From assembly GCA_904063045.1 (NCBI GenBank), contig CAJFCJ010000024.1, positions 372,001-436,000 of the forward strand: DNA of 64,000 nucleotides. The letters run 5' to 3'. Origin of the DNA: Dimorphilus gyrociliatus. Its lineage: Eukaryota; Animalia; Annelida. This document shows positions 5,652 to 64,000 of the stretch, in pieces. Positions within the stretch are counted from its first letter, which is position 1. Each line of letters opens with the position of its first letter. The position numbers were made by a program, and so were the translations under genes. Below the pieces are notes generated by a model. The model ran no database searches, was not told where the DNA came from, and was given only the letters and a program-made list of their open reading frames with translations.

Positions 5652-6914
5652 TTTTTCCGAACCTCACTCTACTCCCAAATGCGACAGTTTGATGGTTGCT
5701 ATGCATAGCCGAGCATGCGCCTTTTTTAGTTGAAAAAACACGCCCTCTGTAGGAAGCATGGATCGCCTACTGTAGACCTGAATAACTTAATTACTTGGTT
5801 ACAAATTGAGAGTAAAAAGATCAAAGAAATATTCATGACTAGACCAGGAATAGGAACCACCCCAACCATGGGACATTTATTTATTTTTTTTCACAATATC
5901 TATATCTAGTCAAACATGTGTTTTTTACCGTTTAAGTAAACCTATTAAGTGAAATTTAATCTGTCTTAAATACAGATGATATTTGGCCAGCTTTCGTTAC
6001 TTTTAATAATATAGTTTGACAGATTTAAAGCATTTAAACTAACACTCGTTGAGATGACATTCGGAAAGAAACTAGGACATATCTCCTATAAAAATTATCA
6101 CGAAACAAAAGAATGTATCATCCTATAGGAATTTTCCCTAATACTGGTTGCAAAAACAAGAATAGGGAACACATTTTAGCCATCGAGTGCTTTATGCCGT
6201 GGGTGATTATATTCTAAAAAAAAATCCTTATAACACGTTTTCTGGTTTATTAATTCATGAAGTGGTAATAAATAAAAGGTTTAATTTTCATTGCTAATAC
6301 GACTATAGAATTCTCATCACAAGATCTCTGATAGTAGCTGCGATTTTCAACTTTTCTCCATTCTTCCATTTTTTGGTTAATATAAAAAAATTATCAGATA
6401 TAATCAATCTTCGCTATCTATTCCTATCATAATCTTAAGAATGCATAAAACTGACTTTTCTCTCTCTTTTTCTCTCTGTGACATTGAATTTCAATAATAT
6501 TATTTAAAGCAATAAAATGTCTAATGATTTATTCTTTTTTTTTTACGTTATGTGTTTAGTCGAAACAAAGCGCCATTGAGGCAGACATAATGGAATGTTC
6601 TCAAAAAATTTAAAATATATATCTTTTTTTTAAAAAAAAAACAGAATAACAAAATAACTATAAACCATTTTTTACTGCTCAATAGCATTTAAAATTACCT
6701 TTTTCTCTTTTTATAAGCTAAGAGTGATCTTTTTGTAGGTCACCTTCGTTTAATATATACAAATATATATACAAAGGCTTTAAGAAAAGTTTATATGTTT
6801 AAATTAACCACTCTATGTATATTCAGTAGTTCGGTTTGGCGGGCTTATTTACATTTCATTAGTTTAACATTTAAATAATCAATCTCGAATTTATATTTAT
6901 TTAATACTAAAATA

Positions 6915-7993
6915 ATGAAATTTCGAGCTATTTTAAATGATGTAACTTGTGTTCAGCATCTATCACGTAAGTATATTTTTTGGGCGTATTGAAAACAGTT
7001 GAGCGATAATAAAAGAAAATGATAAAAAGTCATGTTTTATTTATATTTTTTCCATAGATGTCTTATCAGCTCTTGTAAAATTATCCAACCCATGGACCTT
7101 GAAACTTTCACCTAATAAATTTTTCTTTATTCTTAATCAAAGAATTACCGATGGGGGTATGACTGTTTGGTGTGAACTAATACAAACTTCCTTTTTTAGC
7201 GAATATGCTATGGAAGGAGTCAATCATGAAGATGCTAACGAAATATTACTTGAGCTGCAATTAGAGCAGCTTGTGAATGTTTTAAAAACTTGTTTGAAAG
7301 GATGCCAATCTGTAAAATTAAAACTAACAAACGCCCATGGACCCTGTATGACTGTTATTAGCAGAAATTCGTTATCAGCTGAAGTTTGTAGTGAAAATCA
7401 CGTTCCGATTACGGTAATACCAAGGAAAGATTGGAAATATTTTCAAGAACCATCTAGTCCTGATATAGATGCATCTATTTATTTACCTAAAATGACCATC
7501 TTTAAAAACGTAGTTGATAGGATGCACAGTCTTCATGATAAAATCGTAAGATTTGTTATAGATTAGACACTACGAATATTATTATAACTGACAGGGCATC
7601 CACCTTCAGATCTTATCGGCCAACCATAATGGAGAATTAGAAGTTTGTGTCGATGCTGATTTAGTGACGGTTAAAACACACTTTAAGAATCTGGAGCATC
7701 CTCGATGGTCGGGAGATTCTCAAGAGAGCCAAACAAGAAACACTCAACAAAATAGAGAATTTCATAGCGTAACTGTTGATAGTAATAAACTTCTACTCTT
7801 TCTTCTCAGCGAGCAGCTATCGCCTGATAAAATAGCCTGCAGTTAGTAAGATATAAAATTAATACCTTCTTTATTAATGTCTAATTTACTACGATTTTTT
7901 CCCGCAGATATCAAACAGGACATGGTCGCCCATCTAATACTTTTGCACCGAGATTTGTCAATTCAGTATTTAATACCAGCCTGCTTTAATTGA
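6915..7993 (+). CDS. HUS1: Checkpoint clamp (9-1-1) subunit HUS1
   Basis: Exons 6915-6966 (MKFRAILND), 7058-7545, 7610-7841, 7908-7993 (ends IQYLIPACFN*). Motifs WCEL, FFSEYAMEGV, IPITVIPRK and DASIYLP match the HUS1 family. Confidence 0.95.
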
Positions 7994-10900
7994 CTATTTT
8001 CAATCATGACATTCAACTGAGAATAATCAAAAATGTATAAAAAAGATTATTCTTTCGCAATTTTAGATGTAATTTAAAAAAAAAAAAAGAAACAGTGACT
8101 TAATGAATTACAAATGTTTCCATAAATTTCTTATTTACACTATACAGCATATTGAAAAGAACATTAAACTCTCCTTTTCCTCTTAATAAAGACGTTTTCA
8201 TTTGTTTTTTTCTAGGTCAGATTACGAATGTTAAAAGGTTCCAATTCTCGTTCTAAGCCGAAGGTTTTATTGAGTCAGATTGCAATAAGGAGTAAAACTG
8301 ATAGCGTTAGTTTACGGCTAAAAGCATATTCATCGAAATATTTAGCATAACTTTGAGTAAATAGATTTTATAAAGGTCTACGCAAAATTTTAAGGAAACC
8401 GAGTAATATTTTTTAAAAAAAGGCAATAAAGTTATAAAGTTATAAAAGCATACTTGGAGAAAGACTCTATTGTTCAACTTTTATCATTAACTTATTCACT
8501 ATTACAAGTAAAAAGTTTAAATAGCGATAATATCTGAAAAACAATATTCATTCTCTTGTAATAAAATAGAATAACGAAGACATTCTTGAAATATTCTCTC
8601 CTTTTAAATGTTTTATATTATTTCTTATCACAATTACAAATAGGTCTTAAAAAATTTATTTATGCTTTGAAAATATAAACATGTGTTTGATAAGTTTTTT
8701 TGTTATTCATCTTAGGATGAGTTTATTTAAGAATTTTTTCTAATTTTATATAAATATTGCAAGTAAACTTTATATTTCCTTTCTAGTTTGAAATAACTTC
8801 ATTTTATACAATATTCCCTATGTATAATATGTTAAATTCAATTTTCAAGATACATATTTAATATTCAAGTCTTATAAGCGTGATTCAATTTGGGAAAGGG
8901 ACGTCGTTTTTTTTTTTGGGCTTTTTTCATTCGATTTTATTAGAAACTTTCCCTTTGAATTTCTTTTGAATACAATGTTCGGATTTATCACTGCCTGTAG
9001 ATAATCGCATTGTAAATGAATATATTCATTCCGCTCCAAAATTTCTCAATAAAAGCATAAAATCTTTAGATTTCTGGTTCACTAAATTGATAGTAAATAT
9101 CCCTAATTTATTCGTATTAGATAGATTCAACTCTATGTCGAGTCTTCTGAATTAATTTTACCCACTATAGTTATAATTTGTAAAAAAAAAGAAAAGAGAC
9201 TCTCTTCATCCTATATGCAGCTTCTCCGTCTTAACAAAAATATATATACATATATATATATATATTTTCTATTTTCGATTATAAAGGAACCGGAAATAGT
9301 CATGATATTATAAAGTTATATTATTCAATTGTTTTTACATTGTATCTAACACAGTAATAATCATTAATAACGAAAAAAGTAATATAGGTTTGTTTGTTTT
9401 TTTTTTCGAAAAAAAATCTAGATTAAAAATGTAAACTTTATAAAAAACTATAACAATTTAGCTTAATTATGTACCTTGACAACCATTCTAAATAGATCAA
9501 TTTTTGCTTTGTCTCGCTATTTATTATTATTTTAGCAACAGCCGTCATTTAAACTTGACAGTTTTATAAAAATATAAAAAATATTTATTTGCTAATTATA
9601 GAATGTCGTGTGAAAGAAGTTAACACTTAATAATTAGTTACCAAATTTATTGCATTAGCATTTAGATATTTAAATACAAATAAGTAAATATATAAATCTT
9701 CTTTATATTAAAAATAAACAATTAATAAGAAAGCGAAATGGACTCAGAGTTTCTTTGTTTAATTAGCCATTATAATTTTTACAGGTGAAATAAGTTTAGC
9801 AAAAACAAAGGTATCAGACAGATATTGTATTCTATTGATGGACATAAAAAGTTTTTTCTCTCTTTGTCTCTCTCTCTCTCTCTCTCTCTCTCATACACAT
9901 AGTACATATATACACATTTGCTTTCACTTTCTTATCACTATTATTGTTATGTATTCTCATGATATTTCATTAAAGAGATATCTGCAAATACTTTATTTAT
10001 AATCTTCTTACCAACTCCTTATATTAATTTATTCAAAAACTTTCATTCAGTACAAAAATTATTCAATCTACAATAAAAAATGTGCTATTTGTATATGAAT
10101 TAATTATTATTTAAGGTATTAAACTATTTTTTCATTACATGTTATTTATTTATCAATTCAGTGCATTATTAGTATCTTATTAAATATTTCCCCTTAAAAT
10201 TCCATTAGCTCTCTCGTTGCTCGAAGAACAACATTAGACTAAAGTGCTTCTGCTAAAACCTTAATTGAAGGAAATGTATACCATACATATATATCTTCAT
10301 TTCATAAAAAAAATCTCCATAAAGTTCATAATCATTTAACATTGTCAATTATTATCATTTCAAAAATAATTCTTATTGAAGATCATAATCTAAAAATAAC
10401 TACTTTAAGTTCCTGCTTACATAATTATGTAATTAGGTATAAACTTTTTTTATTGTTTTTGTTCCTTCTTTATCGATTAATTCCGCTTATTTAAAGAAAA
10501 TGATAACAATGATAATAATATTATAAATTGATTTCTTACAGACTTGTGAATGACAAGTAAATTAGTTCACGTGTCCCAAGAATTAAAGCTTGTTCATCTA
10601 TTCGATTTTCTATTTAAATTTTTTTAAGAACAATGTCACATAATCAGTGAGTATGAAAGATAAGAAGGAAGAGTGAGAAAAGAAGGTTTTTCTACCTAAA
10701 TACTATTTAGATTATCTTAGACAGATTGAGTTTCTCTTTCAGCTTCTATTTTGCAATTTTAATTGATTTTCATATTAAAAAGATTTTCCATTATAGTTTT
10801 TCCAGCTCTTCCTTTTTCCTTTCTTCCTGTTTTTTATAACCTGAAATGTATTGTTAATGGTGCCGGCAACCTTGCCACATCTTCAATTTGTACTCTTTTC

Positions 10901-49785: not shown

Positions 49786-50789
49786 AGCTAAAAAAAGACA
49801 AATGTGCTAGTGACGCCCTGCTTTCACTGATTAACTAGGATTATCTACAATACGATTAATAATTGATCAATCTGTATTAAAACTGTCTAGTCAGTTTATA
49901 TATTCTTTATTCTTTTTCATATCATCATTTAAAGTACATGAAAAGAGCAATTTATAAAACCTTGAAGAGGGTCTCTTTCTTCTAAAATTATTTTACGCAT
50001 CCTTCGCAACCGTCACATTTGCTGAGGGAAATGAACAAAGTGATTGATTAAAAATTTATCTAAAAATATACCAATTTTCCCTACGTATTGTGCCTTTTAT
50101 ATCATTCTGACGGTGAAATAACCTAATACGGTTAGTTTTGAATCCGCCCTTCAATTTACCACTTTCCACAGAAGGTAAAATATAATGCGTTTTTCGCATT
50201 TAACTCCTCCCTAAAATCGATCACTTCCGCAAAATATTTACAAATAAAAATCTCTAAATGATCGGTTACTATAAAGATTTTTATTAGAGTACTTCTTTCT
50301 TTTTATATATAAAGAATTTTGCAGTATTTTTATAGTTTTTGCTGTATGAAGAAAGGAGGGAGGGGGAAGAATGTTAAAATTTATTATTATTGGTTTAGGG
50401 AGTGAAGGATTGAAGAAAAACTTTTAACCAATAGCAAGCTTATCTGATAAGAATTTCTCTAATCTGACATTTGAAATTTGTGTTCTCTTAATCCTCAGGA
50501 GTCAGTTTTCAAGATGCTAAAATTTCAGTTTTATTTCAATTCTTGTCAGTTAGCTTGGTTTTTTTTCTTCTTCAGATATCACCCTATAATGATGGAAATC
50601 TGAGCTATTCGAAAATAGATTAATGTAGTTACAAATATATATTAATTATTGTGTTATTTAGCGATTTACATTAGGTTTTGTATTTTTAATTATTTAATAC
50701 GCACACATTCAATTAAATTAGACTTAATCGTGACTTAAATATTTGGAATTTTTGTCTCTGCTTGCTCTTTTATTCTCGTTAATGACTCT

Positions 50790-51050
50790 CAAAAGGGGGG
50801 CGGATTTAGTAGGCCATTCCATCCTACCCCTATCAGATATTGGCCATGACACGCTAATGATTGGCTGGGCCATGCGGAAAATCCAACAAAGGTTTCCCGC
50901 CAAAACCCCTGCCCTTGACTTTTTATTATCCGGCTGCCCAAACCGGTGAACCGATCACAACTACGATCGGTAGCCGCCATCTTGCTTGTTTAGTGTTTTC
51001 TATAACGCGCGTTTTAGGGGTCCGAAAAAATCGCGTTTTCGCCAGGGAAA
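50790..51050 (+). promoter_or_regulatory. Dishevelled promoter island
   Basis: GC box (GGGGGCGGA), two ATTGGC (reverse CCAAT) boxes, E2F-like TTTCCCGCC and GCCGCCATCTT (YY1/CTCF-like) in a GC-rich island just upstream of the ATG. Confidence 0.6.
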
Positions 51051-54000
51051 ATGGCGGATGAAACGAAGATAATTTACCATATAGATGATGAATCGACACC
51101 TTACTTGATAAAACTGCCAGTTGGAAGTGATCGGGTGACTTTGGGAGATTTTAAGAACGCTTTGAATCGGCCCAATTATAAATTCTTCTTCAAGTCGATG
51201 GACGATGATTTCGGGTTTGTTATTCAATATTTTTTATAGAAATTAAACAAGATTAGACTAGGGAGATCACTGATCATTCACAATTATCATTGAAAAAGTC
51301 TCTATGTTCTAGGAAAGTAGAAAGAAAGCCCTCTGTTTATAACTTGAGATTTTCTTTGTATGATTAGTCATTCCTGTTAAGCAAGTTAAAAGTTAATTCT
51401 TTTGGAAAGAATCTTCTGCATTTCCATTGTAAGATTGATGGAAACCATATCGTTAAAATTAAAATAATATGTATATGCCTAAAAGTAAATTTAATTATAT
51501 TAAAAACATTTGATAATACTATTTTTAATAGAAAATTTTGAAGAAAAGGAGAAAAGACTATTTAAAGTTTTAATTGGTTAAATCTGTGATCAGATGTAGT
51601 GAGATTTTTATTACCAGAAAATATATGGACTTTAATGGCATATTCCCGTCCAAATTTATTGCTAATCAATAGTATGATTAACAGCATCTTTTATTGTACG
51701 TTACAATATAGTGAACAAGTAAACGTTCTATAGAAATGTTCTTTTTTCTTTTTAAATGAAATAATCACAAATACTATACGTTAGAAGAATTTTTATATAA
51801 TTTCTAATTAAATATTATAAAATATATTTCTCAACAGAAGAAAATACCAGTAATTTTAGCATTCTATATAATAATTAATCCAATTTTAATTGGGCAGAGC
51901 AAGTAGTTTATTTTCATTATAATTAAACAATATATTAGAATAAATATTCACCTTAAAGGAAAAGGAATTATCGATAGAATACGAGAAGTTCTTGTTAACT
52001 GTTATTTTATTTAGTTATATATTTGTTGTAGGTAATAAGAATAATAAAAAGCATTTGATTTTTAGAATTTTCTACAATGTAATCAAATACAAGCATGGAA
52101 TAAAGACTATTCTTACTGTTTATTATAACTTATATAATTATATGGCTGGCTTTTTCCACCATTTAAATTACTATTTAACTTTATTTAATTGACGGTATAA
52201 GCTAAGCTAAAGAAATAGATATATATATTAGTGTTTATGTTTATATACATTGTTAAATATGGAGTACAGCTAAACACCTTTTTCTGATTAATGGATCTTT
52301 TCTTGCTCAATACAGAACTAGGTTTAGAAACGTGATGAAAAACTGTTTTCTATCGGATGATGTTAATTATCCTAGGCTAGGAGTAAAAATTTGTTTTTTA
52401 GTTTAAAGTAGGTTTACATTAGGAGAAATGTTTTCTGCGATAATTTATTCAAATATATTCACATGATACTAATTAAATTTTTTATCTTTTTTCTTATTAA
52501 AAAAAGGGTTGTTAAAGAAGAAATAACGGACGATGATCAGAAATTACCTTGTTTCAATGGAAGAGTTGTTTCCTGGGTAAGATAATTATGTAAATGAAAA
52601 CTTTTCAGTTTGTAAATTAAAACTGCTGGGAGTGTTTGTTAAAGAATACTATGGAAAGAATGTATCAATTATCATTTTTATAGTTTGCGTAACAATCTCT
52701 GCAATGAATTATATATTATTATTTTTAAGTGGCGATAACAATAAGTATTTGATCTGATAGTATAATCTAAATAAGTTCTTCAACAATAAGACATAGTGCT
52801 TAATAATTGGTTATTTTTAGTTAAAATTAACGATGTTTCAATACTTTTTAGCTCCTAGAAAAGTTTAGGACTTAAATCTGATTCTAATTAGAGTGTTAAG
52901 ATGATGTGTAATCATTAGGGATAAAAATAAATGTATGAATATGTTATGCTATATTCCTTTATTTTCTTTACACAGCTTGTGGCCGCAGAAAATAGTATAT
53001 CGGATAGTCAGTCTAATTGCACTGAATCAGCAGAGCTTCCAGGCGAAAGAGTAGCCGGCATTGGGGATAGCCGGCCCCCTTCCTTTCAGTAAGTTCTTAT
53101 CTATTTGGCCTAGCTTTTTTTTTTTGCTCACGTACGTTTGCATGCATATACGTTCGTATGCCAGTATGGAAGTATGAATAATCAAAAATATTTAAATTGG
53201 TAATGCCAGATGACATACGAAACAGCTTTCATATTAGATAGTTAATATTATTAAAATTGAAAGAGGTCAAGCCTCAGTAGCCGATAATGTCAATTGCTTT
53301 TTAATCAGTATCTTCCTATAGAGAGATTAAAGATTAGCAATATTTAGGGGATATATCCAATCGCTATCAGAAATCGACAAGTAAAACATTTTTGACTTAG
53401 GGCTTAAAAGCTCTTCATAGTGAAGCCGGAAATAGTAAATTATACACTATATTTTTCTCTCTAGCATGTATAAAAAAGAAAGATATGTTTTAGAATATTC
53501 TATTGAAAATGGAAAAAAAAACCTCCTTTTCGATTACCTGTAGCTAAAAGAGTGATAAAAGTATTATTTCTATAAAATTTACATATTATTCTATAAGTTC
53601 GCAAAGTGTAAAAGGCTTCACTGTTACATACGGAATATTTAGACTTTAAATAATTTAAGAGAAATCAAAAGATAATGATAATGCTTGTTCGAACTAAGTT
53701 GTTTGTCATTAATAAGATAGATGGCGCCCAATGAAAAAATCGACCAGGTCGTTGGCGTATAGACCAAATTTGATTCCAATACATATTAATGTAAATATTT
53801 CGTCCGAACGACGTGGCGCCGATCTATGCGCAAGTCAGTGTAAAAAGGCTTATTTTCCAGTCTATTTTAAATAGCAAACAGCAACGGTTAAAAATAGAGA
53901 ACTATGGTGGGAGGTGTAAAAGGAGAAGAGTGGTATTACTAAAAGTCGAATCATTAAGGGGTTGTTAAGATGGGCAAACAGTTGCAAAATATTTCTTCCG

Positions 54001-57000
54001 ATCATCCGGAACAATCATAGTCTAGTCGGGTTTGTTCCGGTTAAAAAATTCGCTGTCTGTATATTTAAGTATATGTATACCGTTTATAAATGAAAAAGGG
54101 AAACGGCGTGGGAAAGATAGCGATTTTATGTTAACTAAGGCCTTTTTTGGCCTATAGAATAAGAAATTTCCAATGCTGTATAAACATTCCTGAGCGAATT
54201 ATTCGATTTCGCTAGAAAAATAGGAAATATTTCAATGATGAATTACCAGTTGACTTTTTAAAAAACATAAAATTCAAAGAAAAGCTTTAATACGTGAAAT
54301 CTATGGCTGTTAAAGATATAAACGAAATCGTCACTTGTAGAAGCCGGCGAGACGGCGTATTGATTTTTCCCTACATTTTCTTATAGACCTATATAGATCT
54401 AGACGGTTCAGTCTTAGCTTATAAAACCTATATACTTTTCTTTGGCTCAAGGTCATTACACTTTCGTCTAGATTTTTTTCTTTTTTGTCTGCAGGTTTTA
54501 ATATTAATTTCGATATCGCAAATTACCTTAGAGGCTAAATCAATTAAGCCTAACTAGCTTAATTTTAGCAAAAAATTTTCATGTAGCTAATATATAATTT
54601 AGTGTAAAAACTAATCAAACAGTTAAGTTTTTATAAAACCATTCATATGGACAAATTCTTTTATAGTTTGATTTTGTTATAACTCCTTATTCACTCAATT
54701 AATAATATTTCATTTTAATGAGATTGGGTTTTTATATTGTAAATTATCCGTATGTAAATAGAAATGCAAAAAAAAGAGAGGTTTGGAATGAGGTTTTTTC
54801 CTTTCTTCTTTTCTCTCACCTCCCCTGTATCGCTAACTCAATCGCCAACATATCTTTTTTCCCTATCCTTTCTAGTTTCCTACGAATAATCCACTGTCCA
54901 AAAAAATCTTTTTAAAAGAATAATTATGAATTTAGGCCACGATCTTGCTTTATATAAATCATATTATAGTTACATATGATAAAAGATTGTTTAACGAGAA
55001 ATGAAAAAGAAATTTATATGTAACCAGATGAATGTGCAATTATTTTCCGCATTATTCGACAATGATAAAAGTAGGTTGAATAGGTACAGTAATTATACAG
55101 GTAGTATACAGGCGACAAGACACTTTTTCATATATATATGCATATATATATATATAGTATTAAAAAACCAGACAGGAAAGAATTCCAGTGTTAAAAATAG
55201 AATGTAATATGGCGTTTAATTAATGAAGTTACATAAATTAGAGTTTCTTATAATTTTTATATACAGTATATATAGTATAAATATATATATATATATATAT
55301 TATAGTAAGAAAAATGCGTAGGCGATAAAGATGAAAATTCTTTTCTATTAAAAGCGTTTAAATGTTTACACTAGGCGTACACGTTTTAGCCACGTATATA
55401 GAAATTATCATTTATTAGTAAACGTATTTCTTGCTATTCGAATGTTAATTAGTAGTTCAGTTTATTCCAAATGAAAATTGTATATAGGAGTAATTATGTT
55501 TCAGAATTAATTCTGATCTTTTTTATGATATTTAAAGGAGAAGAATGAGTATTTTTTAAGGTTGAGTAGGTTTATTGTTAAAAACGATTTACCTTGAGCC
55601 CACTGAATACTTCTTGCGAAATAATCAAAAGTTAACGATTTGACGGCAGAAAACTAACCAATTATTTATTAACTTGTCATATTTCATGGATTCTGCTTAT
55701 ATATATTGCAGCAAACTATTTAAATATTAGTTGATTTTGAGTAAATTGAAATATAGGAGTGTATTAAGAGAATAGCCTTTTTCTAGTAGGTTTATTGTGT
55801 TCTATATTTTCAACTAGCTTGTTAAATTGGTGATAAACTTAACATTTTTATCTTCGTTCTTAAATATTAAGCGGTAATGGCTGTAGAACTTTATGTTTTA
55901 TCTGTAATAAAAACTAATAAAACTAAAGGTGAACTGAGCCGGTCATCTACACTATAAAAACTGGGTGGAATAGGATATACTGTAGGACGTTTAGAATGAA
56001 TCTTTTGCCGTTGCTAGGTACTAAGTTCCTTTCTATTGGAATTTGTTTAAAGAGCACTCGTAAATTGTTTTTCTTGAGCCGTGAACCCGTCTAAATTCTG
56101 GTTATAATAGTGCTTTATAAAAAGTAGGAGAATGACCCGTAAAAAACCGGCTACTAAACTCTGCTCGGTTTGCGTGTAATTCCTCCTTATATTACAAAGG
56201 CCTTGAGTTGTATTTGTTAAACAATGACCATTGTACATTGCGAATAGGCGTCGCTGGGTGTCAAATTCCAATTTTTCCTAAGGTCTCTGCTCTGAGATTA
56301 TTCGTGCCGAACGCAGTCCCAACGTGGATGAAAACCCTTCAGTTTTCTCTACACAGCTGTCTTCTTTATCCTTTTTATTTCATCCACAATCGAACTGTAT
56401 TGAACAAAAGGCCGCACGCAAAGCATTCGTAGGCGTATGATCTCAAATCAATAATACAGACACTGCTATAAACGTTGGTTTCCCGTGCAGATCGGGCGGA
56501 CACGAGTGGGTGGGAAGGGCGAAAGCAAAAATAAAAGGTTCAGCTTGAATTTGCCAAGATACAATGAAAAGGATATGAAAAATTTAACAGGGCAGATTAG
56601 ATATATAATCAAACATGATTAACGTGTTTGATTAAAATTTATACTGAATATATAGATATATAATAGTGTATAGATATATAATAGCATATATATATAGATA
56701 ATGTTACTCTGTCCTTAAGGGAATTCTGAGTCTTTTTTTCTAATTTGACTGTTAAGTCTCTAGGATACTAGTTATAATAAAAAGAATAAATACGTGAAAT
56801 ACTAGGCCATACGGTGGAATGAAGCCAGGTTTTTTTATAGTCGTGTAAGTTTTCGATCAGCCACCTCATTCCCGAGGTCCCTAATTCGTGCTCGTTGTCT
56901 CCTCTAAAGGCACAAATTAAGGTCTCAGGGAAGAGGTGAACCGTCAGTTATGCTAGATTTTCATTGTGGTCTTTTTCTAATCCTCTTTTTTCATTCCGCC

Positions 57001-60000
57001 TTTGAAAAATAGAAGAGAAAGAGTAAAAGAAAAAAATGTGAAAGACATTGACACACTTAAAATGTAAATTAAGAAGTAGAGGTTCAAAAAAAGAGATAAT
57101 TTCATCCTTTCAAATGAAAAGCTAGAGCTCTCGAAAAAATTGTACTGGTATAAATCTCTCTGGTGCTCTTTCACTAAATATCTAACTATCTCTCTATGTC
57201 TATCGTTGGCTAGCATACTCATTCTTCATATTTTCTAACGATGAGATGAATATCAGCACCGGATTCCCGCATTTACGAACTTGAATTAATCACAATTGTC
57301 TTGCAAGTTCGGATCTACGGGTTACAGGTGCCGATTAAATGAATCTTGATTAAAAGAATTCCATAGCATTTCTTATATTAGACGTTAACAGCGAGATATT
57401 AAAGTATAAACAAAATAAAAATAGATAAAATATATAAAGCAGTACGGTAGAAAAGTGAATCTGTCTGTTTCGTTCTTTTTTTATGCTCTCTCTCTCTCTC
57501 TTGCTTAATCTAATCCATCAATTTTGTACTTATTAACAGCGCCCAAGCCAAAAGAAATTCGAACGTTCAAGATGATTCTTGCGATACTTGCACTACAGAA
57601 ACCGACTCAGTGGCATCAAATAGAAGAGGTTAGTAGAAATTTAAAAACAGATTTTTTGTCGGGTTTTTTTGTGAAAAAAATATTTTTTACCTTCAAATCT
57701 TTTACTTTTTATTACCTTAAAACATACCAAACTTATCGTTAATATTAGGATAAGTTTCGAAGATATTTCAACGATTTTTCATCTTCTCCATTTTTTTAAT
57801 TGTCTCGTTTTTCTATATCCTCGACCTCCTCGTCTCGTTTCTGAAACGAATGAATGCAACCGTCTGCTCTCTGCCTGGGAATCGCCGGCTTAATAGCGAG
57901 ATTCCCGGTGACGTCAGCCATGGTTGGCGCTCTCGTCGAGGTCAACGAATTCTTTTTATAGAGTTCCCTATAATATATAAGCAACGCCATCTAGAATGTG
58001 GTTATACTAGGTTTTTAAATACAATATTTGTAGAGAAAATGTAATAATTAGATAGTCCAAACGTTCATATTTTTCTATTAATTAACTATTCTAGTGTACA
58101 GCGGTTGCAAACCTTCAATTTTTTTAAAATAAGCCATTTTAAAAGAAATCAATTACTTTAAAAAAACAAAAAATATAAAGAACTTTAGCAATAATTACAC
58201 ATATTTTTCATTTATAAAAAAATCGATTGCGTGTTAAGAATGTCTGCTTGATTTCGTGCCAAAAAAATGTTGCCCACACACATAATTTTCACCGGCCTAT
58301 TAAGTTTAAACAAAACTTGTCTGACTATACAGACTACTTACCTTTCTCCTTATCGCTTACTCGTTTTATTGATTGACTGCAAGGCAAAAATGTTCTTGTC
58401 TGCAGTCTTTCTTATTAATGGATAGAAAGGATGCTTCTTTTATATTTTACTTTATAATTTAATCATAAAAGGTTCCCTTTTTATCAACATTTATAAAAAT
58501 TCTGTCGTTTGGTAATATTCCATGTGATATCCCAAGTGACCAATCAATTTGATAAATATATCATGTGCAGGACATTTTATTAAGTGACTAAATTATATTA
58601 TTAATTTTATATGTGCCTTCTACTTGAACTGAAGCTATACGCATTCAAATCAATAGAAATATGAAAAAGAATTTATATATATATATATATATATAAATTA
58701 ATATATACATTAAACTATAAATTCAGTTTCAGCGTATGCGCCTTTAAAAATTGTACTGTAGGAAATAATTACTGCCTTGTCTAAAATATTTTTATTATCT
58801 TATCGATTTATATATGTAAAAGAGATATATTTGTTCAAATGTCTTATACATATAGACATATATATAAATAAGTGTATTTCTTATGAATATCCAATACTAT
58901 TAAAAATATGTCATCTCATCATTGAATAGGTAATATAGTTATGAACAAAAATATATTAAATATATATTTATTTTATATGAAATTACCTGGTTCACCTGCA
59001 TGGAAAATAATAACTAATAATTAATGTTAGTTAGGCTTGTATGGCTTCTATTCTCCAAAAAAAAAAATATTATCTTGATAATTTTCTATTATATAATTTA
59101 GAAATATCCATACGGTATAGAATTCTAAAAGCTATATATTTAAATATGTATGTGTGGTTTTTCAAAAAAAAGTAGAACGAGATATCGAACACAGATGTAA
59201 AGTACAGTACTTTCAGGAAGAGAACATTTTTTTTAGCAAGCTGACGAACTGTGTGTAGAATAAAAGATTTTTTGGTTAGATTACAGCAAAACCTTGACTA
59301 CTGTAAAAAAAAAAAACGAATATATATATATATATATATATATAGATCTCTCGTTTCTGTTGTTAATTGATATATAGAGAGTCTACCTTTAGTTTTAATT
59401 AATTATTTGCTTTCTTTCTTTATTTTATAGAGATTTGAGAGAAAAAAGTAATTAGTATCTTGTTTAAAATTTAATACAAATTTCATAAAAAATATGAATA
59501 GCGAGAAAGGAATATCTTTCATATCATGTCACTTAATTATTTAAACTTGTATAATAAATTACACGTTTATAGATAATTAATGAATTTCTGAACTAGTTTC
59601 AGTTTAATCAAATATTGAATGAACATCGTGGTAAAAATAGTCTGTAGTGGCATCTGGTTGAGAAATTATTTATTCAACCACAAGCTGATGTATTTAATAG
59701 TTTATTTCTTTTTAGGAATGGCAACTTTTTTAAAAAGGCCTAATTAGGGAGGAAAAGAATAATAGATAGATAGAAAGACCTTTATAATCTATCCATCTTA
59801 AGCTTTTTTTTACCGTCTTACCCTCCCCTTCTCTTTCTCTCTAAGGAAGTTTTAGACATCGCGTGCGCCTATCTCCATTTTCAGAATGTCGCTGCGGGCT
59901 ATTTGTGCGTGTTGGAACGATTTTTGCTTGTTAACCGAGTCCTTTTTGTTGAGTGACACTGACACCGGCGCACCCTATTTAAAAAACAGAAATATTTGGT

Positions 60001-63000
60001 TCTACAAACCATTTAAACGACAGAGTTTGAGTGATAATGGTCAAAGTACAAGTACAGTTGAGAAGTAGGAAATATAACGCAGACTTGTGCATTTGCTTAG
60101 TTTTACAGAAAAAGGAAGAAGCTGAAATTATTTTTATTGGTCCCTAAGATTTCTTTTGTATACTGTGCTTTCAATTTCATTATATTTTTACTTATAAACC
60201 TTTTTAGTGTTGTGATACCTTATTGTAAATTTACTTTTATTTTATCCTTTTACCAATCTCCTATTATTAATTCCCCATATTATTTTCGTATTTTTTTTTC
60301 ATTTATTACAGATAGAGGAGGTCCCCCAAGAGTGGCTGCTCAGAGGCATCGGGACGGTCATCACATGCATGATGGTATGTATCACTACCGTAGAAAATTG
60401 ACGCAAGGGTGGAAAACGTGCTAATTTCCAACTACAATATCCGTTTTTCTCTCCTATTTCCTCCCCTCCCTTCCCCTCCACAATTTCTAATTTTTTTTTA
60501 CGCTATGGTGAAGATTTCACTGCGATAATTGTCGTAAATTTATTTTGGAGAGGATAGAAAAGATCCCTTAACTACACTAGAAAGGCTGTCGTGCGAATAT
60601 CTCGTTTATACGGTCTCTTAAGTAAAGTATTCCCTTTTACACAGGAATTTTTCACTAATTTCGCAATTAAATTCTTTGTAACGAAAAAAAAAGATCAAAA
60701 GCCTACAGATGAACTAAACTCTGTAATTACTATAGAGAAACAGGCACGTTAGAAATTTTATCTCTAACTATATACTACATACAAATCTTGTACTTTAGTA
60801 TCTATATTGCTTGTAGAAAGAATTTAAGCATAGTTTACATATGAATTTTTAAATGTTTTAAAAGACAGAAAATACTATATTTTCTATATAATTGGTAATT
60901 AGAGGAAAATTTTATTCTATACTATGGATTTTGTACTTATCAATTGACGCAGAAGCAGGCACATATGACAATTGTCCCAAAGTAAAGTAGCTGCATTACC
61001 TAAATAGAATTCTATACTTTATTATTTTTTATTGTTAATATATAAAATATATTCTTTTCATAATTAGAAATAATTGATACAGAAAAAAAGTGTATATTAC
61101 ATTGATCTTCTTATATGAAGTGTAAAAATACTGATAATCTTTTACTTGGAAGATATTTTAAATATTTACTTTATATGTTATGGGGCGAAATTTATTTATT
61201 TATTTATTATGTTTTTGGATAGAAAAGAACCTCGTCTGGTTGGTTGTAGGCTGTGTTTTTTTTTCTTTTTACCTACAAACTATTTAAGTGTGTAGCAGAC
61301 TAATTGATTATAAATAATATGTTATAAATACTTTGGAGAGCATTTAATCATTAGTTTTTACTTTATTTTGGGGTTGAAGAAAAGCTCTTATCAATTTTCT
61401 GTCCGATAAAGATTGATTAACAAAAATTTCAATTTGCTTAAATGAAGAAATATGAAAAGAAAGGGAATTCGTATAAAGATAGTCAGGCGGGAGACGTCTG
61501 GCGGCGATAAACCGAAACTCATTATTTCGCTAATAGGCCGCTCATTTGGATACAGTCCCAGAACGGGACAAACTGCTGTAAAACTCTCACAAAATGCAGT
61601 TCTTTAAGCGCTTTTTGTGTTCGAAGATTGAAGTTAAAAATAATTCAACTTTTACTTGCGTAAATTGTGGAGTGTTGATGGAAGGAATCGTTGAGAAAAA
61701 GAAGGGATTATGTAAAATATTCGACTTGTTTAAAAGGAAGGACAAAGTTTATAGTATGTTTTTATAAAGAAAAGGCAACTAGTTCCTATATATAATATTT
61801 CACCTTTTCATATTTACTATACCCTTTTAATATTCACGTGCAATAAAGAAAATTCATTAGGAGAAGAGTATAAAAGAATAGAAATAACCAAAAAGTATTT
61901 TGTGTGGTAGTTTAAAATGTCAAAGAGAATTAACGGATATATCACTTTTTGATTTGTTTCGTAATCGAAGAAAATGGAATCTCTTTTTTCTAGTTGCTAT
62001 TCAGTCTCTATATAAAAAATTGAGGAATACTTAGGAAATGCATCGCTGAGAAGCGGAAAGGATTATGTAGATTATTCGATTTGTTTAGGAGGAATGCTAT
62101 TACAGAAGGACGAATTGGGGTTTCTTTTTTTTTTACATTGATAATATTTTCGTGAGTTTATGCTTAGAAGCTAAAATTGGTTTGTTAGTACTCTTTTCTA
62201 AAGTTAAATAAGGAATATTTCAGATATTCAGATCGCTTCTCCACCAAGAAATGTGGGAATTAATCATTTAGATTAGTGATCATGACTTTGTCATTTACTT
62301 CCTTTTTCGACTTCCAAAATGTCGAATATATCCGATCAATTTGACTTTGATAGACGTGTTTATTTTTTAAAGGAAAAGATTGTGTAGAAGGTTTTTGTGG
62401 AAAGTTTCAGAATGGCTACAATTCTGATAGTCACAATTAATACTGTTTAAGAATCTCCGTATACCATTAATGTCAACTTAATTTATTAAAAAAATTCGTC
62501 CTTAGCAACGCTTCTAATTGTTGACTTGTTTTTTTTTAGTTATACGAATTAATGGACATAATAAGTTACCAAAACCTCATGGATTTGATGCTACCTCTAG
62601 TATATTGAGTTCAGACTTAGAAACGACGAGTTTTGTTGATTCAGAAGATGATGCCTACAGTCGGTTCTCTTCGGCCACTGATACAACGTGTTCAGCGTAC
62701 ATGCAACGATATCGCCAAAGGCGTCGACGGCGTCATCGACCGCCACCAATTAGTCGAGCCTCCTCCTTCTCGTCCATTACCGATTCAACTATGTCCCTTA
62801 ACATAATTACCGTCACTTTGAATATGGGTAAGTTTTTTTTTTTACAGCCAAGTTTATGTTGTTGTAAAGTGATCAAGATTGGGAGATGGCCAGTATTGAT
62901 CGGAAGCTTGGTGTCCGGGGGGTGTTTTTTAATTTCCTCTCTTAACGAAAATATCGATGAAAGCGTCAACCTTTCTTTTCCAATTTACTACAGATACCAT

Positions 63001-63689
63001 CAACTTCCTTGGAATAAGTATAGTTGGACAGAGTAATAAAACAGGAGATGGTGGTATATATGTTGGCTCAATTATGAAAGGAGGAGCCGTAGCTCAAGAT
63101 GGGCGAATTGAACCTGGTGATATGATATTGGAAGTCAACGGTGTCAGTTTTGAGAATATGAGTAACGACGATGCTGTTCGTACTCTTAGGGAATCCGTAC
63201 TCAAACCTGGACCTATAACGCTAGTCGTGGCTAAATGCTGGGATCCCAATCCAAAAGGTTACTTTACAGTACCCAGACAAGAACCTGTCCGGCCAATAGA
63301 TCCTGGTGCATGGATAGCACATACTACAAATGCTCTCCAGGGACGATATACTAGTACATCTTCCATGACATCGTCGAATCCCGATTCCGAACGGTCAATT
63401 CAGAATCTCACAGCAGATGCTGATATGACAACTGTAGTTAGAGCTATGGCCCAGCCTGATTCTGGTTTAGATATCAGAGATAGACAATGGCTAAAAATAA
63501 CAATACCTAACGCTTTTATCGGTTCAGACCTAGTCGATTGGCTGAATACGCATGTTGAGGGATTCGCAAGTAAGAAAGATGCTAGGAAATATGCTTGCAA
63601 CTTGCTTAAAGCAGGTTATATAAGGCATACAGTAAATAAATTAACGTTTTCGGAGCAGTGCTATTATGTATTTGGAGATATTTGTGGAG
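51051..63689 (+). CDS. dsh: Dishevelled (DIX-PDZ-DEP), C-terminal exon(s) beyond window
   Basis: Exons 51051-51214 ([16 protein letters not shown]), 52507-52576, 52976-53088, 57540-57628, 60312-60374, 62540-62827 ([31 protein letters not shown]) and 62994-63689 ([34 protein letters not shown]...[12 protein letters not shown]), all in phase. Confidence 0.97.
56862..56938 (-). ncRNA. mir-125: miR-125 family precursor hairpin
   Basis: Minus strand 56931-56910 reads UCCCUGAGACCUUAAUUUGUGC, 19/22 identical to canonical UCCCUGAGACCCUAACUUGUGA with the seed intact. The 3' arm CACGAAUUAGGGACCUCGGGA and a basal stem CACCUC/GAGGUG are present. Confidence 0.9.
57252..57335 (-). ncRNA. mir-100: miR-100 precursor hairpin
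   Basis: Minus strand 57323-57302 reads AACCCGUAGAUCCGAACUUGCA, with the first 20 nt identical to canonical miR-100. The gapless stem has 23 Watson-Crick plus 2 G-U pairs over 32 positions, a loop of about 20 nt, and a 3' arm CAAGUUCGUAAAUGCGGGAAUC. Confidence 0.95.
57850..58000. promoter_or_regulatory. GC-rich regulatory island in Dishevelled intron 4 (candidate pri-miRNA promoter)
   Basis: Perfect CRE TGACGTCA at 57909-57916 and ACGCCATCTAG (CTCF-like) at 57984-57994, about 570-660 nt upstream of miR-100 in minus orientation. Confidence 0.4.
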
Positions 63690-64000
63690 GTTTGTAAAAT
63701 TATTATTAGCATTCATTATTCATATATAAGGGATATAGGATATTAGATGGGCATCTTTTACTTGATTTCTGAACATTTTCTATTTATTGATATTTTTTTT
63801 GCCATTTAATTAATTGTTCTTTCGATTTCATCTTTACTAGAATGTGATGAAATCGTAAAGAAAGAGAAAGCACATATCTCATATATATATATTTATATAA
63901 GATATATTTCATTCATTCATTAAACATTAATATCTTTTATGATTTTAGTTTCCATATTTTATTCTACCCAATTTATATCTTAATATATAAACATAATATC

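What the first reader, a model, noticed from the sequence alone, without database searches (positions are those of the whole stretch)
56862..57335. miR-100 and miR-125 cluster nested antisense inside Dishevelled intron 3
Seen: two well-formed hairpins on the minus strand carrying near-canonical mature miR-100 and miR-125, 200-680 nt from Dishevelled exon 4. They are invisible to the ORF track. Established: miR-100, let-7 and miR-125 form an ancient bilaterian cluster involved in developmental timing, and human miR-100/miR-125b from MIR100HG have been reported to repress Wnt antagonists. Inference: the pri-miRNA is transcribed against Dishevelled and probably overlaps its exon 4 (57540-57628) if it starts at the CRE-containing island near 57900. 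That would physically couple a timing miRNA locus to the core Wnt transducer through transcriptional interference or shared enhancers.
Basis: partly seen in the sequence, partly recalled or inferred. Interest (0 to 1): 0.8.

Follow-up and report, generated by a model that had tools for sequence, protein, structure and literature searches.

The report
miR-100/miR-125 pair nested in Dishevelled
Two ancient developmental-timing microRNA genes (miR-100 and miR-125, without their usual partner let-7) sit backwards inside an intron of the Wnt-pathway gene Dishevelled in a miniature marine worm, and the same gene-within-gene package occurs a second time elsewhere in the genome, although five other worms and shellfish lack it.

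Summary
Two strong minus-strand hairpins (57256-57330 and 56859-56940, fold z about -5.2 each) carry miR-100-like and miR-125-like 5' arms. They lie in a 4,451-nt intron between Dishevelled exon 3 and a real 89-nt exon 4; a spliced contig from a related worm confirms that splice.

New here:
- A diverged second Dishevelled gene on another scaffold (C16) holds its own antisense miR-100/miR-125 pair in the same intron.
- The Dishevelled loci of Capitella, Owenia, Lottia, Lingula and Lineus hold none. The nesting is therefore derived, and most simply older than the gene duplication.
- let-7 is absent from both pairs. Two solitary let-7 hairpins lie elsewhere, one 612 kb away on the same scaffold.
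- In RNA-type runs of a relative, unspliced contigs cover 55628-57569, spanning both hairpins and running into exon 4. They are unstranded, and nothing was laid on the proposed CRE promoter island.

Transcription against Dishevelled is therefore implied. Overlap with exon 4 is plausible but unproven, and functional coupling to Wnt signalling is untested. The hairpins are probably already listed as genome-only predictions in MirGeneDB 3.0. I found no report of the nesting or its duplication.

The parts
57256..57330 (-). pre-miR-100-like hairpin (MIR-10 family)
   Evidence: Rfam mir-10 model matched 1-74/74, 31 bits, E 7.6e-5. Fold -34.5 kcal/mol, z -5.17. 57231-57349 is 118/119 identical in a relative's contig, while exon 4 beside it has 10 differences in 117.
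57302..57323 (-). predicted mature miR-100-5p, AACCCGUAGAUCCGAACUUGCA
   Evidence: 2 mismatches to the canonical 22-mer, both at the 3' end. The 19-nt core occurs exactly once in the 77.9-Mb genome.
56859..56940 (-). pre-miR-125-like hairpin (lin-4/miR-125)
   Evidence: Rfam lin-4 model matched 1-80/80, 25.1 bits, E 0.05; the mir-2003 model also matched. Fold -40.5 kcal/mol, z -5.16.
56910..56931 (-). predicted mature miR-125-5p, UCCCUGAGACCUUAAUUUGUGC
   Evidence: 3 mismatches to the canonical 22-mer, seed intact. One exact copy in the genome, plus a 1-mismatch copy on C16.
56941..57255 (-). 315-nt spacer where let-7 would be expected; no let-7 hairpin
   Evidence: No let-7 at up to 3 mismatches. 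The best ungapped match is 14/22 at 57172-57193, P about 0.02-0.06. No stable fold there.
55628..57569 (.). block covered by unspliced contigs in RNA-type runs of a relative; candidate primary miRNA transcript body
   Evidence: X5/X6 records 7 and 8 cover 55628-56616 and 56686-57569 at depth 23-26. Dishevelled exon contigs have depth 77-111. Nothing real was laid on the rest of intron 3 or on 57629-58612. Strand is not shown.
52975..53088 (+). Dishevelled exon 3
   Evidence: tblastn with Capitella Dishevelled. Contig joint 53088->57540 with GT..AG ends.
53089..57539 (+). Dishevelled intron 3 (4,451 nt), host of the miRNA pair
   Evidence: Joint that skips 4,451 bases, GT..AG.
57540..57628 (+). 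Dishevelled exon 4 (89 nt)
   Evidence: Boundaries read. Alignment to Capitella residues 118-150. Contigs join exon 3 to exon 4 and exon 4 to exon 5.
57794..58010 (.). conserved island in intron 4 with a palindromic CRE (57909-57916), TATAAAAA on the minus strand (57953-57960) and TATAATATATAA on the plus strand (57969-57980); candidate promoter or enhancer, orientation open
   Evidence: Sequence read. The block is about 92% alike in the relative's contig X1 record 2, between unalignable flanks. No X5/X6 contig was laid on it.
60312..60374 (+). Dishevelled exon 5 (63 nt)
   Evidence: The loose end after 57628 in X5/X6 matches this exon. Boundaries read.
51051..64000 (+). Dishevelled gene (Dsh1). 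Exon 1 runs from 51051 to about 51215, exon 2 about 52508-52579, exon 6 from 62548 to about 62835, and exon 7 starts at about 63005. The gene runs past the window end to a stop at window-equivalent 67101.
   Evidence: tblastn with Capitella, Owenia and Bradybaena Dishevelled. PDZ-DEP exon: best hit 83% identity, E 4.6e-117, to a snail protein with DIX, PDZ and DEP domains.

Best explanation
These are the worm's miR-100 and miR-125 genes, a let-7-less remnant of the ancestral bilaterian miR-100/let-7/miR-125 cluster. The genome is probably Dimorphilus gyrociliatus.

How it most likely works:
- The pair forms its own non-coding transcription unit on the minus strand inside intron 3 of a Dishevelled gene.
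- One primary transcript of about 2 kb or more carries both hairpins, which are then processed in the ordinary Drosha/Dicer way.
- The transcript probably starts at or upstream of Dishevelled exon 4, so it would overlap that exon in antisense. This step is inferred, not shown.

History:
- The arrangement arose in the lineage leading to this worm, after its split from Capitella.
- It arose before a duplication that copied Dishevelled together with its nested miRNA pair. The genome therefore holds two such packages, C24 (this window) and C16.
- let-7 now lives as two solitary genes elsewhere.

The persistence of both packages is best read as two things: selection on the miRNAs themselves, and the difficulty of moving a gene out of an intron. 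It is not evidence of a regulatory link to Wnt signalling.
For: Identity of the hairpins:
- Full-length Rfam matches, seed-intact mature arms and fold z about -5.2.
- The miR-100 hairpin is 118/119 identical in a relative, while the neighbouring coding exon has 10 differences in 117 and the flanks do not align.

Nesting:
- Exon 3 to exon 4 splice joint 53088->57540, GT..AG.
- Exon homology to Capitella Dishevelled.

One transcript:
- A single 924-nt contig in X5/X6 spans both hairpins and runs into exon 4.
- A second contig continues to 55628 and about 150 nt beyond.
- The rest of introns 3 and 4 is not covered.

Second package:
- On C16, a Dishevelled paralogue on the plus strand holds miR-100-like and miR-125-like hairpins on the minus strand, in the intron after exon 3.
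- Rfam mir-10 gives 29.6 bits; fold z is -3.8 and -6.1.
- blastn is colinear through exon 1, exon 2, the miR-125 hairpin and the later exons, at 65-78% nucleotide identity.
- Only these two Dishevelled genes exist in the genome.

Derived state:
- No miR-100, miR-125 or let-7 at up to 5 mismatches in the Dishevelled gene plus or minus 10 kb of Lottia, Capitella, Owenia, Lingula or Lineus. Both positive controls were found by the same scan.
- Capitella and Platynereis are reported to have complete, tight miR-100/let-7/miR-125 clusters (PMC3384580).

let-7 elsewhere:
- Hairpins at C24:1041242 (+) and C2:1227299, Rfam let-7 45.8 and 47.8 bits.
Against: - No small-RNA reads exist for this species. 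MirGeneDB 3.0 lists it as genome-only (PMC11701709), so processing is inferred.
- Both Rfam scores are below the gathering thresholds (31 against 47.5; 25.1 against 40).
- The contigs are unstranded, come from relatives only 90-95% alike, and the runs are only guessed to be RNA. Their coverage could be retained intron, an internal plus-strand start, or DNA.
- No contig was laid upstream of exon 4, so the start site and the overlap with exon 4 are open.
- The order of events (nesting first, duplication second) rests on parsimony. A DEP-domain tree did not resolve Dsh1 and Dsh2 as sisters. The only sequence support is a shared EGFASK motif against EGFADR in 14 of 15 other Dishevelled proteins.
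- The species name rests on an earlier scan note and on genome size.
Confidence: 0.8

Rival explanations
1. The nest is a selected regulatory module. Antisense transcription of the primary miRNA transcript across Dishevelled exon 4, or enhancers shared within the large introns, ties the output of the Wnt transducer to the timing miRNAs. That link would be why both packages survived an old duplication.
For: - Both paralogous packages keep intact hairpins and seeds despite only 65-78% nucleotide identity in the exons.
- An unspliced contig crosses the intron 3/exon 4 boundary.
- In Dsh2 only the miRNA-bearing intron is long, about 3 kb against 54-71 nt for introns 1 and 2.
- A conserved CRE/TATA island sits 570 nt upstream of miR-100.
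Against: - No expression data by strand or developmental stage.
- In Dsh2 I found no exon within about 1.6 kb upstream of its miR-100 copy, so exon overlap is not shared by the two packages.
- No similarity between the two loci outside the exons and the miR-125 hairpin.
- No seed sites after the Dsh1 stop codon.
- Nested genes tend to stay nested without any functional link.
Confidence: 0.12
2. The intronic coverage is not an independent transcript. It is Dishevelled pre-mRNA, a partly retained intron, or DNA carry-over. On this reading the miRNAs have a short private promoter between exon 4 and miR-100, or are expressed too weakly to be seen.
For: - The contigs are unstranded, and X5/X6 are only guessed to be RNA.
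- X1/X2 contigs are long and colinear with the genome, like DNA.
- A TATA-like run lies on the minus strand near 57430, upstream of miR-100.
Against: - X5/X6 do hold the spliced exon 3 to exon 4 joint, so they contain RNA.
- Their intronic coverage is confined to about 2 kb around and downstream of the hairpins, at about a quarter of exon depth.
- Nothing was laid on blocks that are conserved in the other relative, such as 53738-53897, 54340-54479 and 57794-58010. Uniform DNA or whole-intron retention would not give this pattern.
Confidence: 0.2
3. The hairpins are decaying relics or chance look-alikes, no longer making miRNAs.
For: - Rfam scores are below gathering.
- There are no small-RNA data.
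- let-7 has been lost from between them.
Against: - Seeds and 19-20 of 22 mature positions are kept.
- Both folds are far better than shuffles.
- The miR-100 hairpin is more conserved than the adjacent coding exon in a relative.
- A second pair keeps the same seeds.
- An earlier scan note reports let-7 and miR-125 sites after the TRIM71 stop codon in this genome (s1-081651, not checked here).
Confidence: 0.04

Closest known systems
Bilaterian miR-100/let-7/miR-125 cluster (Drosophila let-7-Complex; human MIR100HG and MIR99AHG; Capitella and Platynereis clusters)
   Same: miR-100 lies upstream of miR-125 on one strand a few hundred nt apart, apparently within one non-coding primary transcript. 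The mature seeds are the same.
   Different: - let-7 is missing from between them and lives elsewhere as two solitary genes.
- The unit lies antisense inside a protein-coding gene.
- It occurs twice, each time inside a Dishevelled paralogue.
- Capitella and Platynereis are reported to keep the complete tight cluster (PMC3384580).
Disintegrated let-7 clusters of nematodes and flatworms (C. elegans lin-4 in an intron of F59G1.4; Schistosoma and Schmidtea)
   Same: The cluster is broken up, and a miR-125/lin-4 homologue sits in an intron of a coding gene (PMC3384580).
   Different: Here miR-100 is kept and stays linked to miR-125; only let-7 left the cluster. Orientation is antisense to the host. 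The host is Dishevelled, and host and miRNAs were duplicated together.
MirGeneDB 3.0 entries for Dimorphilus gyrociliatus (Mir-10-P2 and Mir-10-P3 type genes)
   Same: Probably the same hairpins. MirGeneDB 3.0 annotated this species from the genome alone (PMC11701709).
   Different: I could not see the entries. The paper says nothing about a Dishevelled host, the second package or the loss of let-7 from the cluster. A full-text search for 'Dgy-Mir' found nothing.
Human MIR100HG-derived miR-100/miR-125b and Wnt signalling
   Same: The same two miRNA families have a reported link to the Wnt pathway. [quoted passage not shown]
   Different: That link works through miRNA targets in human tumour cells. 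Here the link is only physical position, and no target sites were found after the Dishevelled stop codon.

Membership tests
miR-100 (MIR-10 family, Rfam RF00104 mir-10) | Mature 5' arm with the miR-100 seed ACCCGUA and near-identity over about 22 nt | tested here: met
   AACCCGUAGAUCCGAACUUGCA has 2 mismatches, both at the 3' end. It agrees with the Rfam consensus line ACCCGUAGAucCGAacuUGUG.
miR-100 (MIR-10 family, Rfam RF00104 mir-10) | Precursor hairpin of about 70 nt, markedly more stable than shuffles, with the mature sequence in the stem | tested here: met
   -34.5 kcal/mol, z -5.17, 0 of 200 shuffles as good.
miR-100 (MIR-10 family, Rfam RF00104 mir-10) | Covariance-model score at or above Rfam's gathering score (47.5 bits) | tested here: not met
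   31 bits, E 7.6e-5 in 2.5 kb and 4.1e-4 in 13.5 kb, model matched end to end. This is a curated cut-off rather than a biological feature. The shortfall comes from the loop and the 3' arm.
miR-100 (MIR-10 family, Rfam RF00104 mir-10) | Small-RNA reads from both arms with 2-nt 3' overhangs (the MirGeneDB criterion) | not testable with these tools
   No small-RNA run was found, and MirGeneDB 3.0 states there are none for this species.
miR-125 / lin-4 (Rfam RF00052) | Mature 5' arm with seed CCCUGAG and near-identity over about 22 nt | tested here: met
   UCCCUGAGACCUUAAUUUGUGC has 3 mismatches, all outside the seed.
miR-125 / lin-4 (Rfam RF00052) | Stable precursor hairpin | tested here: met
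   -40.5 kcal/mol, z -5.16.
miR-125 / lin-4 (Rfam RF00052) | Covariance-model score at or above the gathering score (40 bits) | tested here: not met
   25.1 bits, E 0.05, model 1-80/80. The mir-2003 model gave 24.3 bits.
let-7 complex (polycistronic miR-100/let-7/miR-125) | A let-7 hairpin between miR-100 and miR-125 | tested here: not met
   No let-7 in the window. There is only a 14/22 look-alike at 57172-57193, without a fold. The C16 spacer is 63 nt.
let-7 complex (polycistronic miR-100/let-7/miR-125) | The hairpins share one primary transcript | tested here: inconclusive
   One contig of a relative spans both hairpins (record 8, 56686-57569). It is unstranded, and the run's RNA status is a guess.
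Antisense intronic (nested) miRNA gene | Lies wholly within an intron of a host gene, on the opposite strand | tested here: met
   The splice joint 53088->57540 on the plus strand encloses both minus-strand hairpins.
Dishevelled (host gene) | DIX, PDZ and DEP domains in order | tested here: met
   Exon-by-exon tblastn to Capitella Dishevelled covers the DIX, PDZ and DEP parts. For the PDZ-DEP exon, the best hits are proteins carrying PF00778, PF00595 and PF00610.

The most novel reading that the evidence does not exclude
A Dishevelled gene with an antisense miR-100/miR-125 unit in its third intron is a selectively maintained module in dinophilid worms. It was kept through a gene duplication because minus-strand transcription of the timing miRNAs and plus-strand transcription of the Wnt transducer regulate each other, by transcriptional interference at exon 4 or by shared intronic enhancers. 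This would wire developmental timing directly to Wnt competence in a genome that has otherwise shed most non-coding DNA.
Probability: 0.12. Interest if true: 0.75.

Novelty: new variant of a known kind. Interest (0 to 1): 0.5.

Why it matters
- The miR-100/let-7/miR-125 cluster is one of the oldest and most stable gene linkages in animals. Here it has lost let-7, moved into a core Wnt gene in antisense, and been copied together with that host. This gives a natural pair of replicates for asking whether antisense nesting has regulatory consequences or is only positional inertia.
- In a genome whose usual introns are about 100 nt, the kilobase-scale introns of this gene mark where non-coding function resists compaction.
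- Practically, the result supplies exact coordinates for four miRNA hairpins, two let-7 genes and a second Dishevelled gene.

Tried and rejected
- Rfam at gathering thresholds over the whole window found nothing. The hairpins appear only in E-value mode.
- A tree of the DEP-domain exon, meant to date the Dishevelled duplication, was unresolved. Dsh2 sits on a very long branch.
[quoted passage not shown] None were found.
- I looked for a counterpart of the CRE/TATA island upstream of the C16 pair. There is none; only a 7/8 CRE-like TGACGTCT lies in its spacer.
- The sigma-70 promoter and terminator scan is not meaningful for an animal genome and gave nothing above shuffles.
- Exact look-ups of several Dishevelled isoforms failed until the longest isoforms were used.
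- A poly(A) signal at about 55665-55670 first looked like the transcript's end. The relative's contig runs about 150 nt further, so I dropped that claim.
- I rejected the idea that the plus-strand (Dishevelled-sense) hairpins are the real miRNAs, because the conserved mature sequences are on the minus-strand 5' arms.


Full report
**1. Observation**

Read on the minus strand, 57323->57302 is AACCCGUAGAUCCGAACUUGCA and 56931->56910 is UCCCUGAGACCUUAAUUUGUGC.

| Hairpin | Precursor | Rfam match | Gathering score | Fold |
|---|---|---|---|---|
| miR-100-like | 57256-57330 | mir-10, 1-74/74, 31 bits, E 7.6e-5 | 47.5 | -34.5 kcal/mol, z -5.17 |
| miR-125-like | 56859-56940 | lin-4, 1-80/80, 25.1 bits, E 0.05 | 40 | -40.5 kcal/mol, z -5.16 |

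- No shuffle of either hairpin folded as well.
- Both Rfam scores are below the curated thresholds, so the gathering-mode scan of the window was empty.
- In a 90-nt sliding fold of 53100-60300, these two are the most stable minus-strand hairpins.
- No other Rfam family matches anywhere in 50500-64000 at E up to 0.5.

**2. Host gene**

tblastn with Capitella Dishevelled lays out the gene on the plus strand:

| Exon | Coordinates | Notes |
|---|---|---|
| 1 | 51051 to about 51215 | DIX domain |
| 2 | about 52508-52579 | |
| 3 | 52975-53088 | |
| 4 | 57540-57628 | |
| 5 | 60312-60374 | found through a contig's loose end, boundaries read |
| 6 | 62548 to about 62835 | |
| 7 | from about 63005 | PDZ and DEP domains |

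- Later exons run to a stop at window-equivalent 67101.
- The PDZ-DEP exon hits Dishevelled proteins at up to 83% identity, E 4.6e-117.
- Exon 4 has AG and GT boundaries.
- A contig in runs X5/X6 joins 53088 to 57540, skipping 4,451 bases with GT..AG ends.
- I did not build a joined spliced model. Exons were handled one by one.

**3. Organism**

- The genome has 77.9 Mb in 349 contigs, and the window is C24:372001-436000.
- An earlier scan note names it Dimorphilus gyrociliatus (s1-080610). The size fits published figures of 70-74 Mb (PMC11701709, PMC12257675).
- I did not verify the name independently.
- MirGeneDB 3.0 includes this species as a genome-only annotation with predicted reads. The hairpins themselves are therefore probably already listed there.

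**4. let-7**

- The window has no let-7.
- The genome has two let-7 hairpins. One is at C24:1041242 on the plus strand, 612 kb from the pair and on the opposite strand. The other is at C2:1227299. Rfam let-7 gives 45.8 and 47.8 bits, and both fold well.
- Neither has a mir-10 or lin-4 match within 1.5 kb.
- The 315-nt spacer between miR-100 and miR-125 holds only a 14/22 ungapped look-alike of let-7 at 57172-57193, P about 0.02-0.06, without a fold. It may be a decayed remnant, but the evidence is weak.
- Hertel et al. 2012 report complete, tightly linked clusters in Capitella and Platynereis (PMC3384580). The let-7-less pair is therefore a derived state.

**5. A second package**

- Genome-wide pattern searches found a second pair on C16. 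The miR-100-like arm is AACCCGUAGUAACGAACUUGUA and the miR-125-like arm is UCCCUGAGACCUUAGUUUGUGC. They lie on one strand with a 63-nt spacer between the hairpins.
- Rfam mir-10 gives 29.6 bits. The folds have z -3.8 and -6.1.
- The surrounding 10 kb (L018) encodes a second, diverged Dishevelled on the opposite strand:
  - exon 1 at 2730-2891 ([18 protein letters not shown]...);
  - exon 2 at about 2963-3031;
  - exon 3 at about 3086-3190;
  - further exons from about 6190 to 8382.
- The miRNA pair (4346-4544, minus strand) lies in the long intron after exon 3. This is the same position and orientation as in the window.
- blastn between the loci is colinear through exon 1, exon 2, the miR-125 hairpin and the later exons, at 65-78% identity. 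There is no other similarity.
- The neighbouring genes differ: an opsin-like receptor here, an F-box/LRR protein there.
- These are the only two Dishevelled genes in the genome.
- In Dsh2, introns 1 and 2 are 71 and 54 nt, and only the miRNA-bearing intron is long.
That is probably this C16 locus. The two had not been connected.

**6. Outgroups**

- I fetched the Dishevelled gene plus 10 kb on each side from:
  - Lottia gigantea (54 kb);
  - Capitella teleta (25.5 kb, gene only 5.5 kb);
  - Owenia fusiformis (71 kb);
  - Lingula anatina (101 kb, with 3.8 kb of N);
  - Lineus longissimus (50 kb).
[quoted passage not shown] The same scan recovered all four hairpins in the window and L018.
- The nest is therefore not general in lophotrochozoans or annelids.
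- The most parsimonious history: the pair came to lie in Dishevelled intron 3 in the lineage of this worm, and Dishevelled was then duplicated with its contents.
- A DEP-exon tree could not confirm that Dsh1 and Dsh2 are sisters. They share EGFASK where 14 of 15 other Dishevelled proteins have EGFADR.

**7. Transcription**

- Only assembled contigs of relatives were available, 90-95% alike.
- X5/X6 (one organism, RNA status guessed) contain the spliced exon 3 to exon 4 and exon 4 to exon 5 joints at depth 77-111, so they hold RNA.
- They also contain two unspliced contigs at depth 23-26:
  - The first covers 55628-56616 and extends about 150 nt further without aligning.
  - The second (924 nt) covers 56686-56990, 57175-57376 and 57489-57569. 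It spans both hairpins and crosses into exon 4, ending where the spliced form branches off.
  - The break between the two contigs falls in a TA-rich low-complexity run.
- Nothing real was laid on 53100-55600 or on 57629-58612.
- This pattern fits a discrete transcript of 2 kb or more carrying both hairpins. It fits whole-intron retention or uniform DNA less well. Strand and ends are not shown.
- X1/X2 (coral-tank metatranscriptomes) give long, colinear, unspliced contigs that look like a relative's DNA. They serve as phylogenetic footprints:

| Block | Feature | Differences |
|---|---|---|
| 57231-57349 | miR-100 hairpin | 1 in 119 |
| 57519-57635 | exon 4 | 10 in 117 |
| 57794-58010 | CRE/TATA island | 15 differences plus 2 gaps in 217 |

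- The sequence between these blocks is unalignable. The miR-100 hairpin is thus under stronger constraint than the coding exon next to it, and the nest exists in at least one other related species.

**8. The proposed promoter**

- The island holds a palindromic CRE (57909-57916).
- It holds TATAAAAA on the minus strand (57953-57960). That would place a minus-strand start near 57930, just upstream of the CRE.
- It also holds TATAATATATAA on the plus strand (57969-57980), about 50 nt downstream of the CRE. This is the more usual order for a plus-strand promoter.
- No X5/X6 contig lies on the island.
- Whether it drives the miRNA transcript is open, and so is the overlap with exon 4. I put the overlap at about even odds.

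**9. Functional coupling**

- I found no miR-100, miR-125 or let-7 seed sites in 1.5 kb after the Dsh1 stop codon.
- In Dsh2 I found no exon within about 1.6 kb upstream of its miR-100 copy. Exon overlap is therefore not a shared feature of the two packages.
- Retention of both packages shows selection on both miRNA pairs and both hosts. Nested genes are hard to separate anyway, so a regulatory link is possible but unsupported (about 12%).

**10. Verdict**

- The annotation stands: real miR-100 and miR-125 genes, antisense in Dishevelled intron 3.
- The coupling idea is untested.
- The new facts are the paralogous second package, its absence from five outgroups, and the relocation of let-7.
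- Full-text searches found no paper linking these miRNAs to a Dishevelled intron or discussing Dishevelled in this species in that sense.
- I class it as a new variant of a known kind, of moderate interest.

Noticed in passing
G000:C16:513730-519382 (L018 2730-8382); miRNA pair at L018 4346-4544 (-): A second, fast-evolving Dishevelled paralogue carries its own antisense miR-100/miR-125 pair in the intron after exon 3. Its DEP exon lacks 8 residues (the MWLKITIP stretch). It shares EGFASK with Dsh1, against EGFADR in 14 of 15 other Dishevelled proteins.
   Followed up: yes
window 57172-57193 (-): A let-7-like 22-mer (14/22 ungapped, P about 0.02-0.06 against Markov simulations) sits in the middle of the miR-100/miR-125 spacer, with no hairpin. 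It may be a decayed let-7 remnant.
   Followed up: partly
G000:C24:1041242 (+) = L001 1495-1566; G000:C2:1227299 (+) = L002 1495-1574: Two solitary let-7 hairpins (mature UGAGGUAGUCGGUUGUAUAGU and CGAGGUAGUGGGUUGUAUAGU). The C24 copy lies between a GPCR-like ORF and a DEAD-box helicase ORF, 612 kb from the miR-100/125 pair and on the opposite strand.
   Followed up: partly
window 57794-58010: A non-coding island in Dishevelled intron 4, conserved in a relative, with a perfect CRE and TATA-like runs on both strands. It could be a promoter of either orientation or an enhancer. No contig from the RNA-type runs X5/X6 lies on it.
   Followed up: partly
window 51051-64000 and beyond to about 67101: Dsh1 spans about 16 kb, with introns of 1.3, 4.5, 2.7 and 2.2 kb. 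The typical intron in this genome is about 100 nt and the typical gene about 2 kb (PMC12257675, Table 3). Further conserved non-coding blocks in a relative lie at 53254-53314, 53738-53897, 54161-54220, 54340-54479, 54974-55097, 58271-58410 and 58514-58578.
   Followed up: no
window 59740-59829 (-): A stable hairpin (-28.5 kcal/mol) in Dishevelled intron 4 with no Rfam match. Another lies at 56310-56399 (-), at -24.8 kcal/mol, inside the block covered by the unspliced contigs.
   Followed up: no
G000:C18:579678 (L008 1492-1564, +): A genuine mir-10 hairpin (UACCCUGUAGAACCGAACUUGUG) reaches Rfam's gathering score (48 bits). Its antisense strand also scores 34.7 bits.
   Followed up: no
runs X1-X4 (coral metatranscriptomes), laid on window 52900-58800: Coral-tank metatranscriptome libraries contain long unspliced contigs (up to 8.7 kb over this locus) of a worm related to this genome, 90-99% alike in conserved blocks. 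A dinophilid-like relative evidently lives in those tanks, and its DNA is in the libraries.
   Followed up: no
window 55572-55800 (-): A short motif ACAATAAACCTACT occurs twice on the minus strand (near 55800 and 55577), downstream of the miRNA pair. Each copy contains AATAAA.
   Followed up: no
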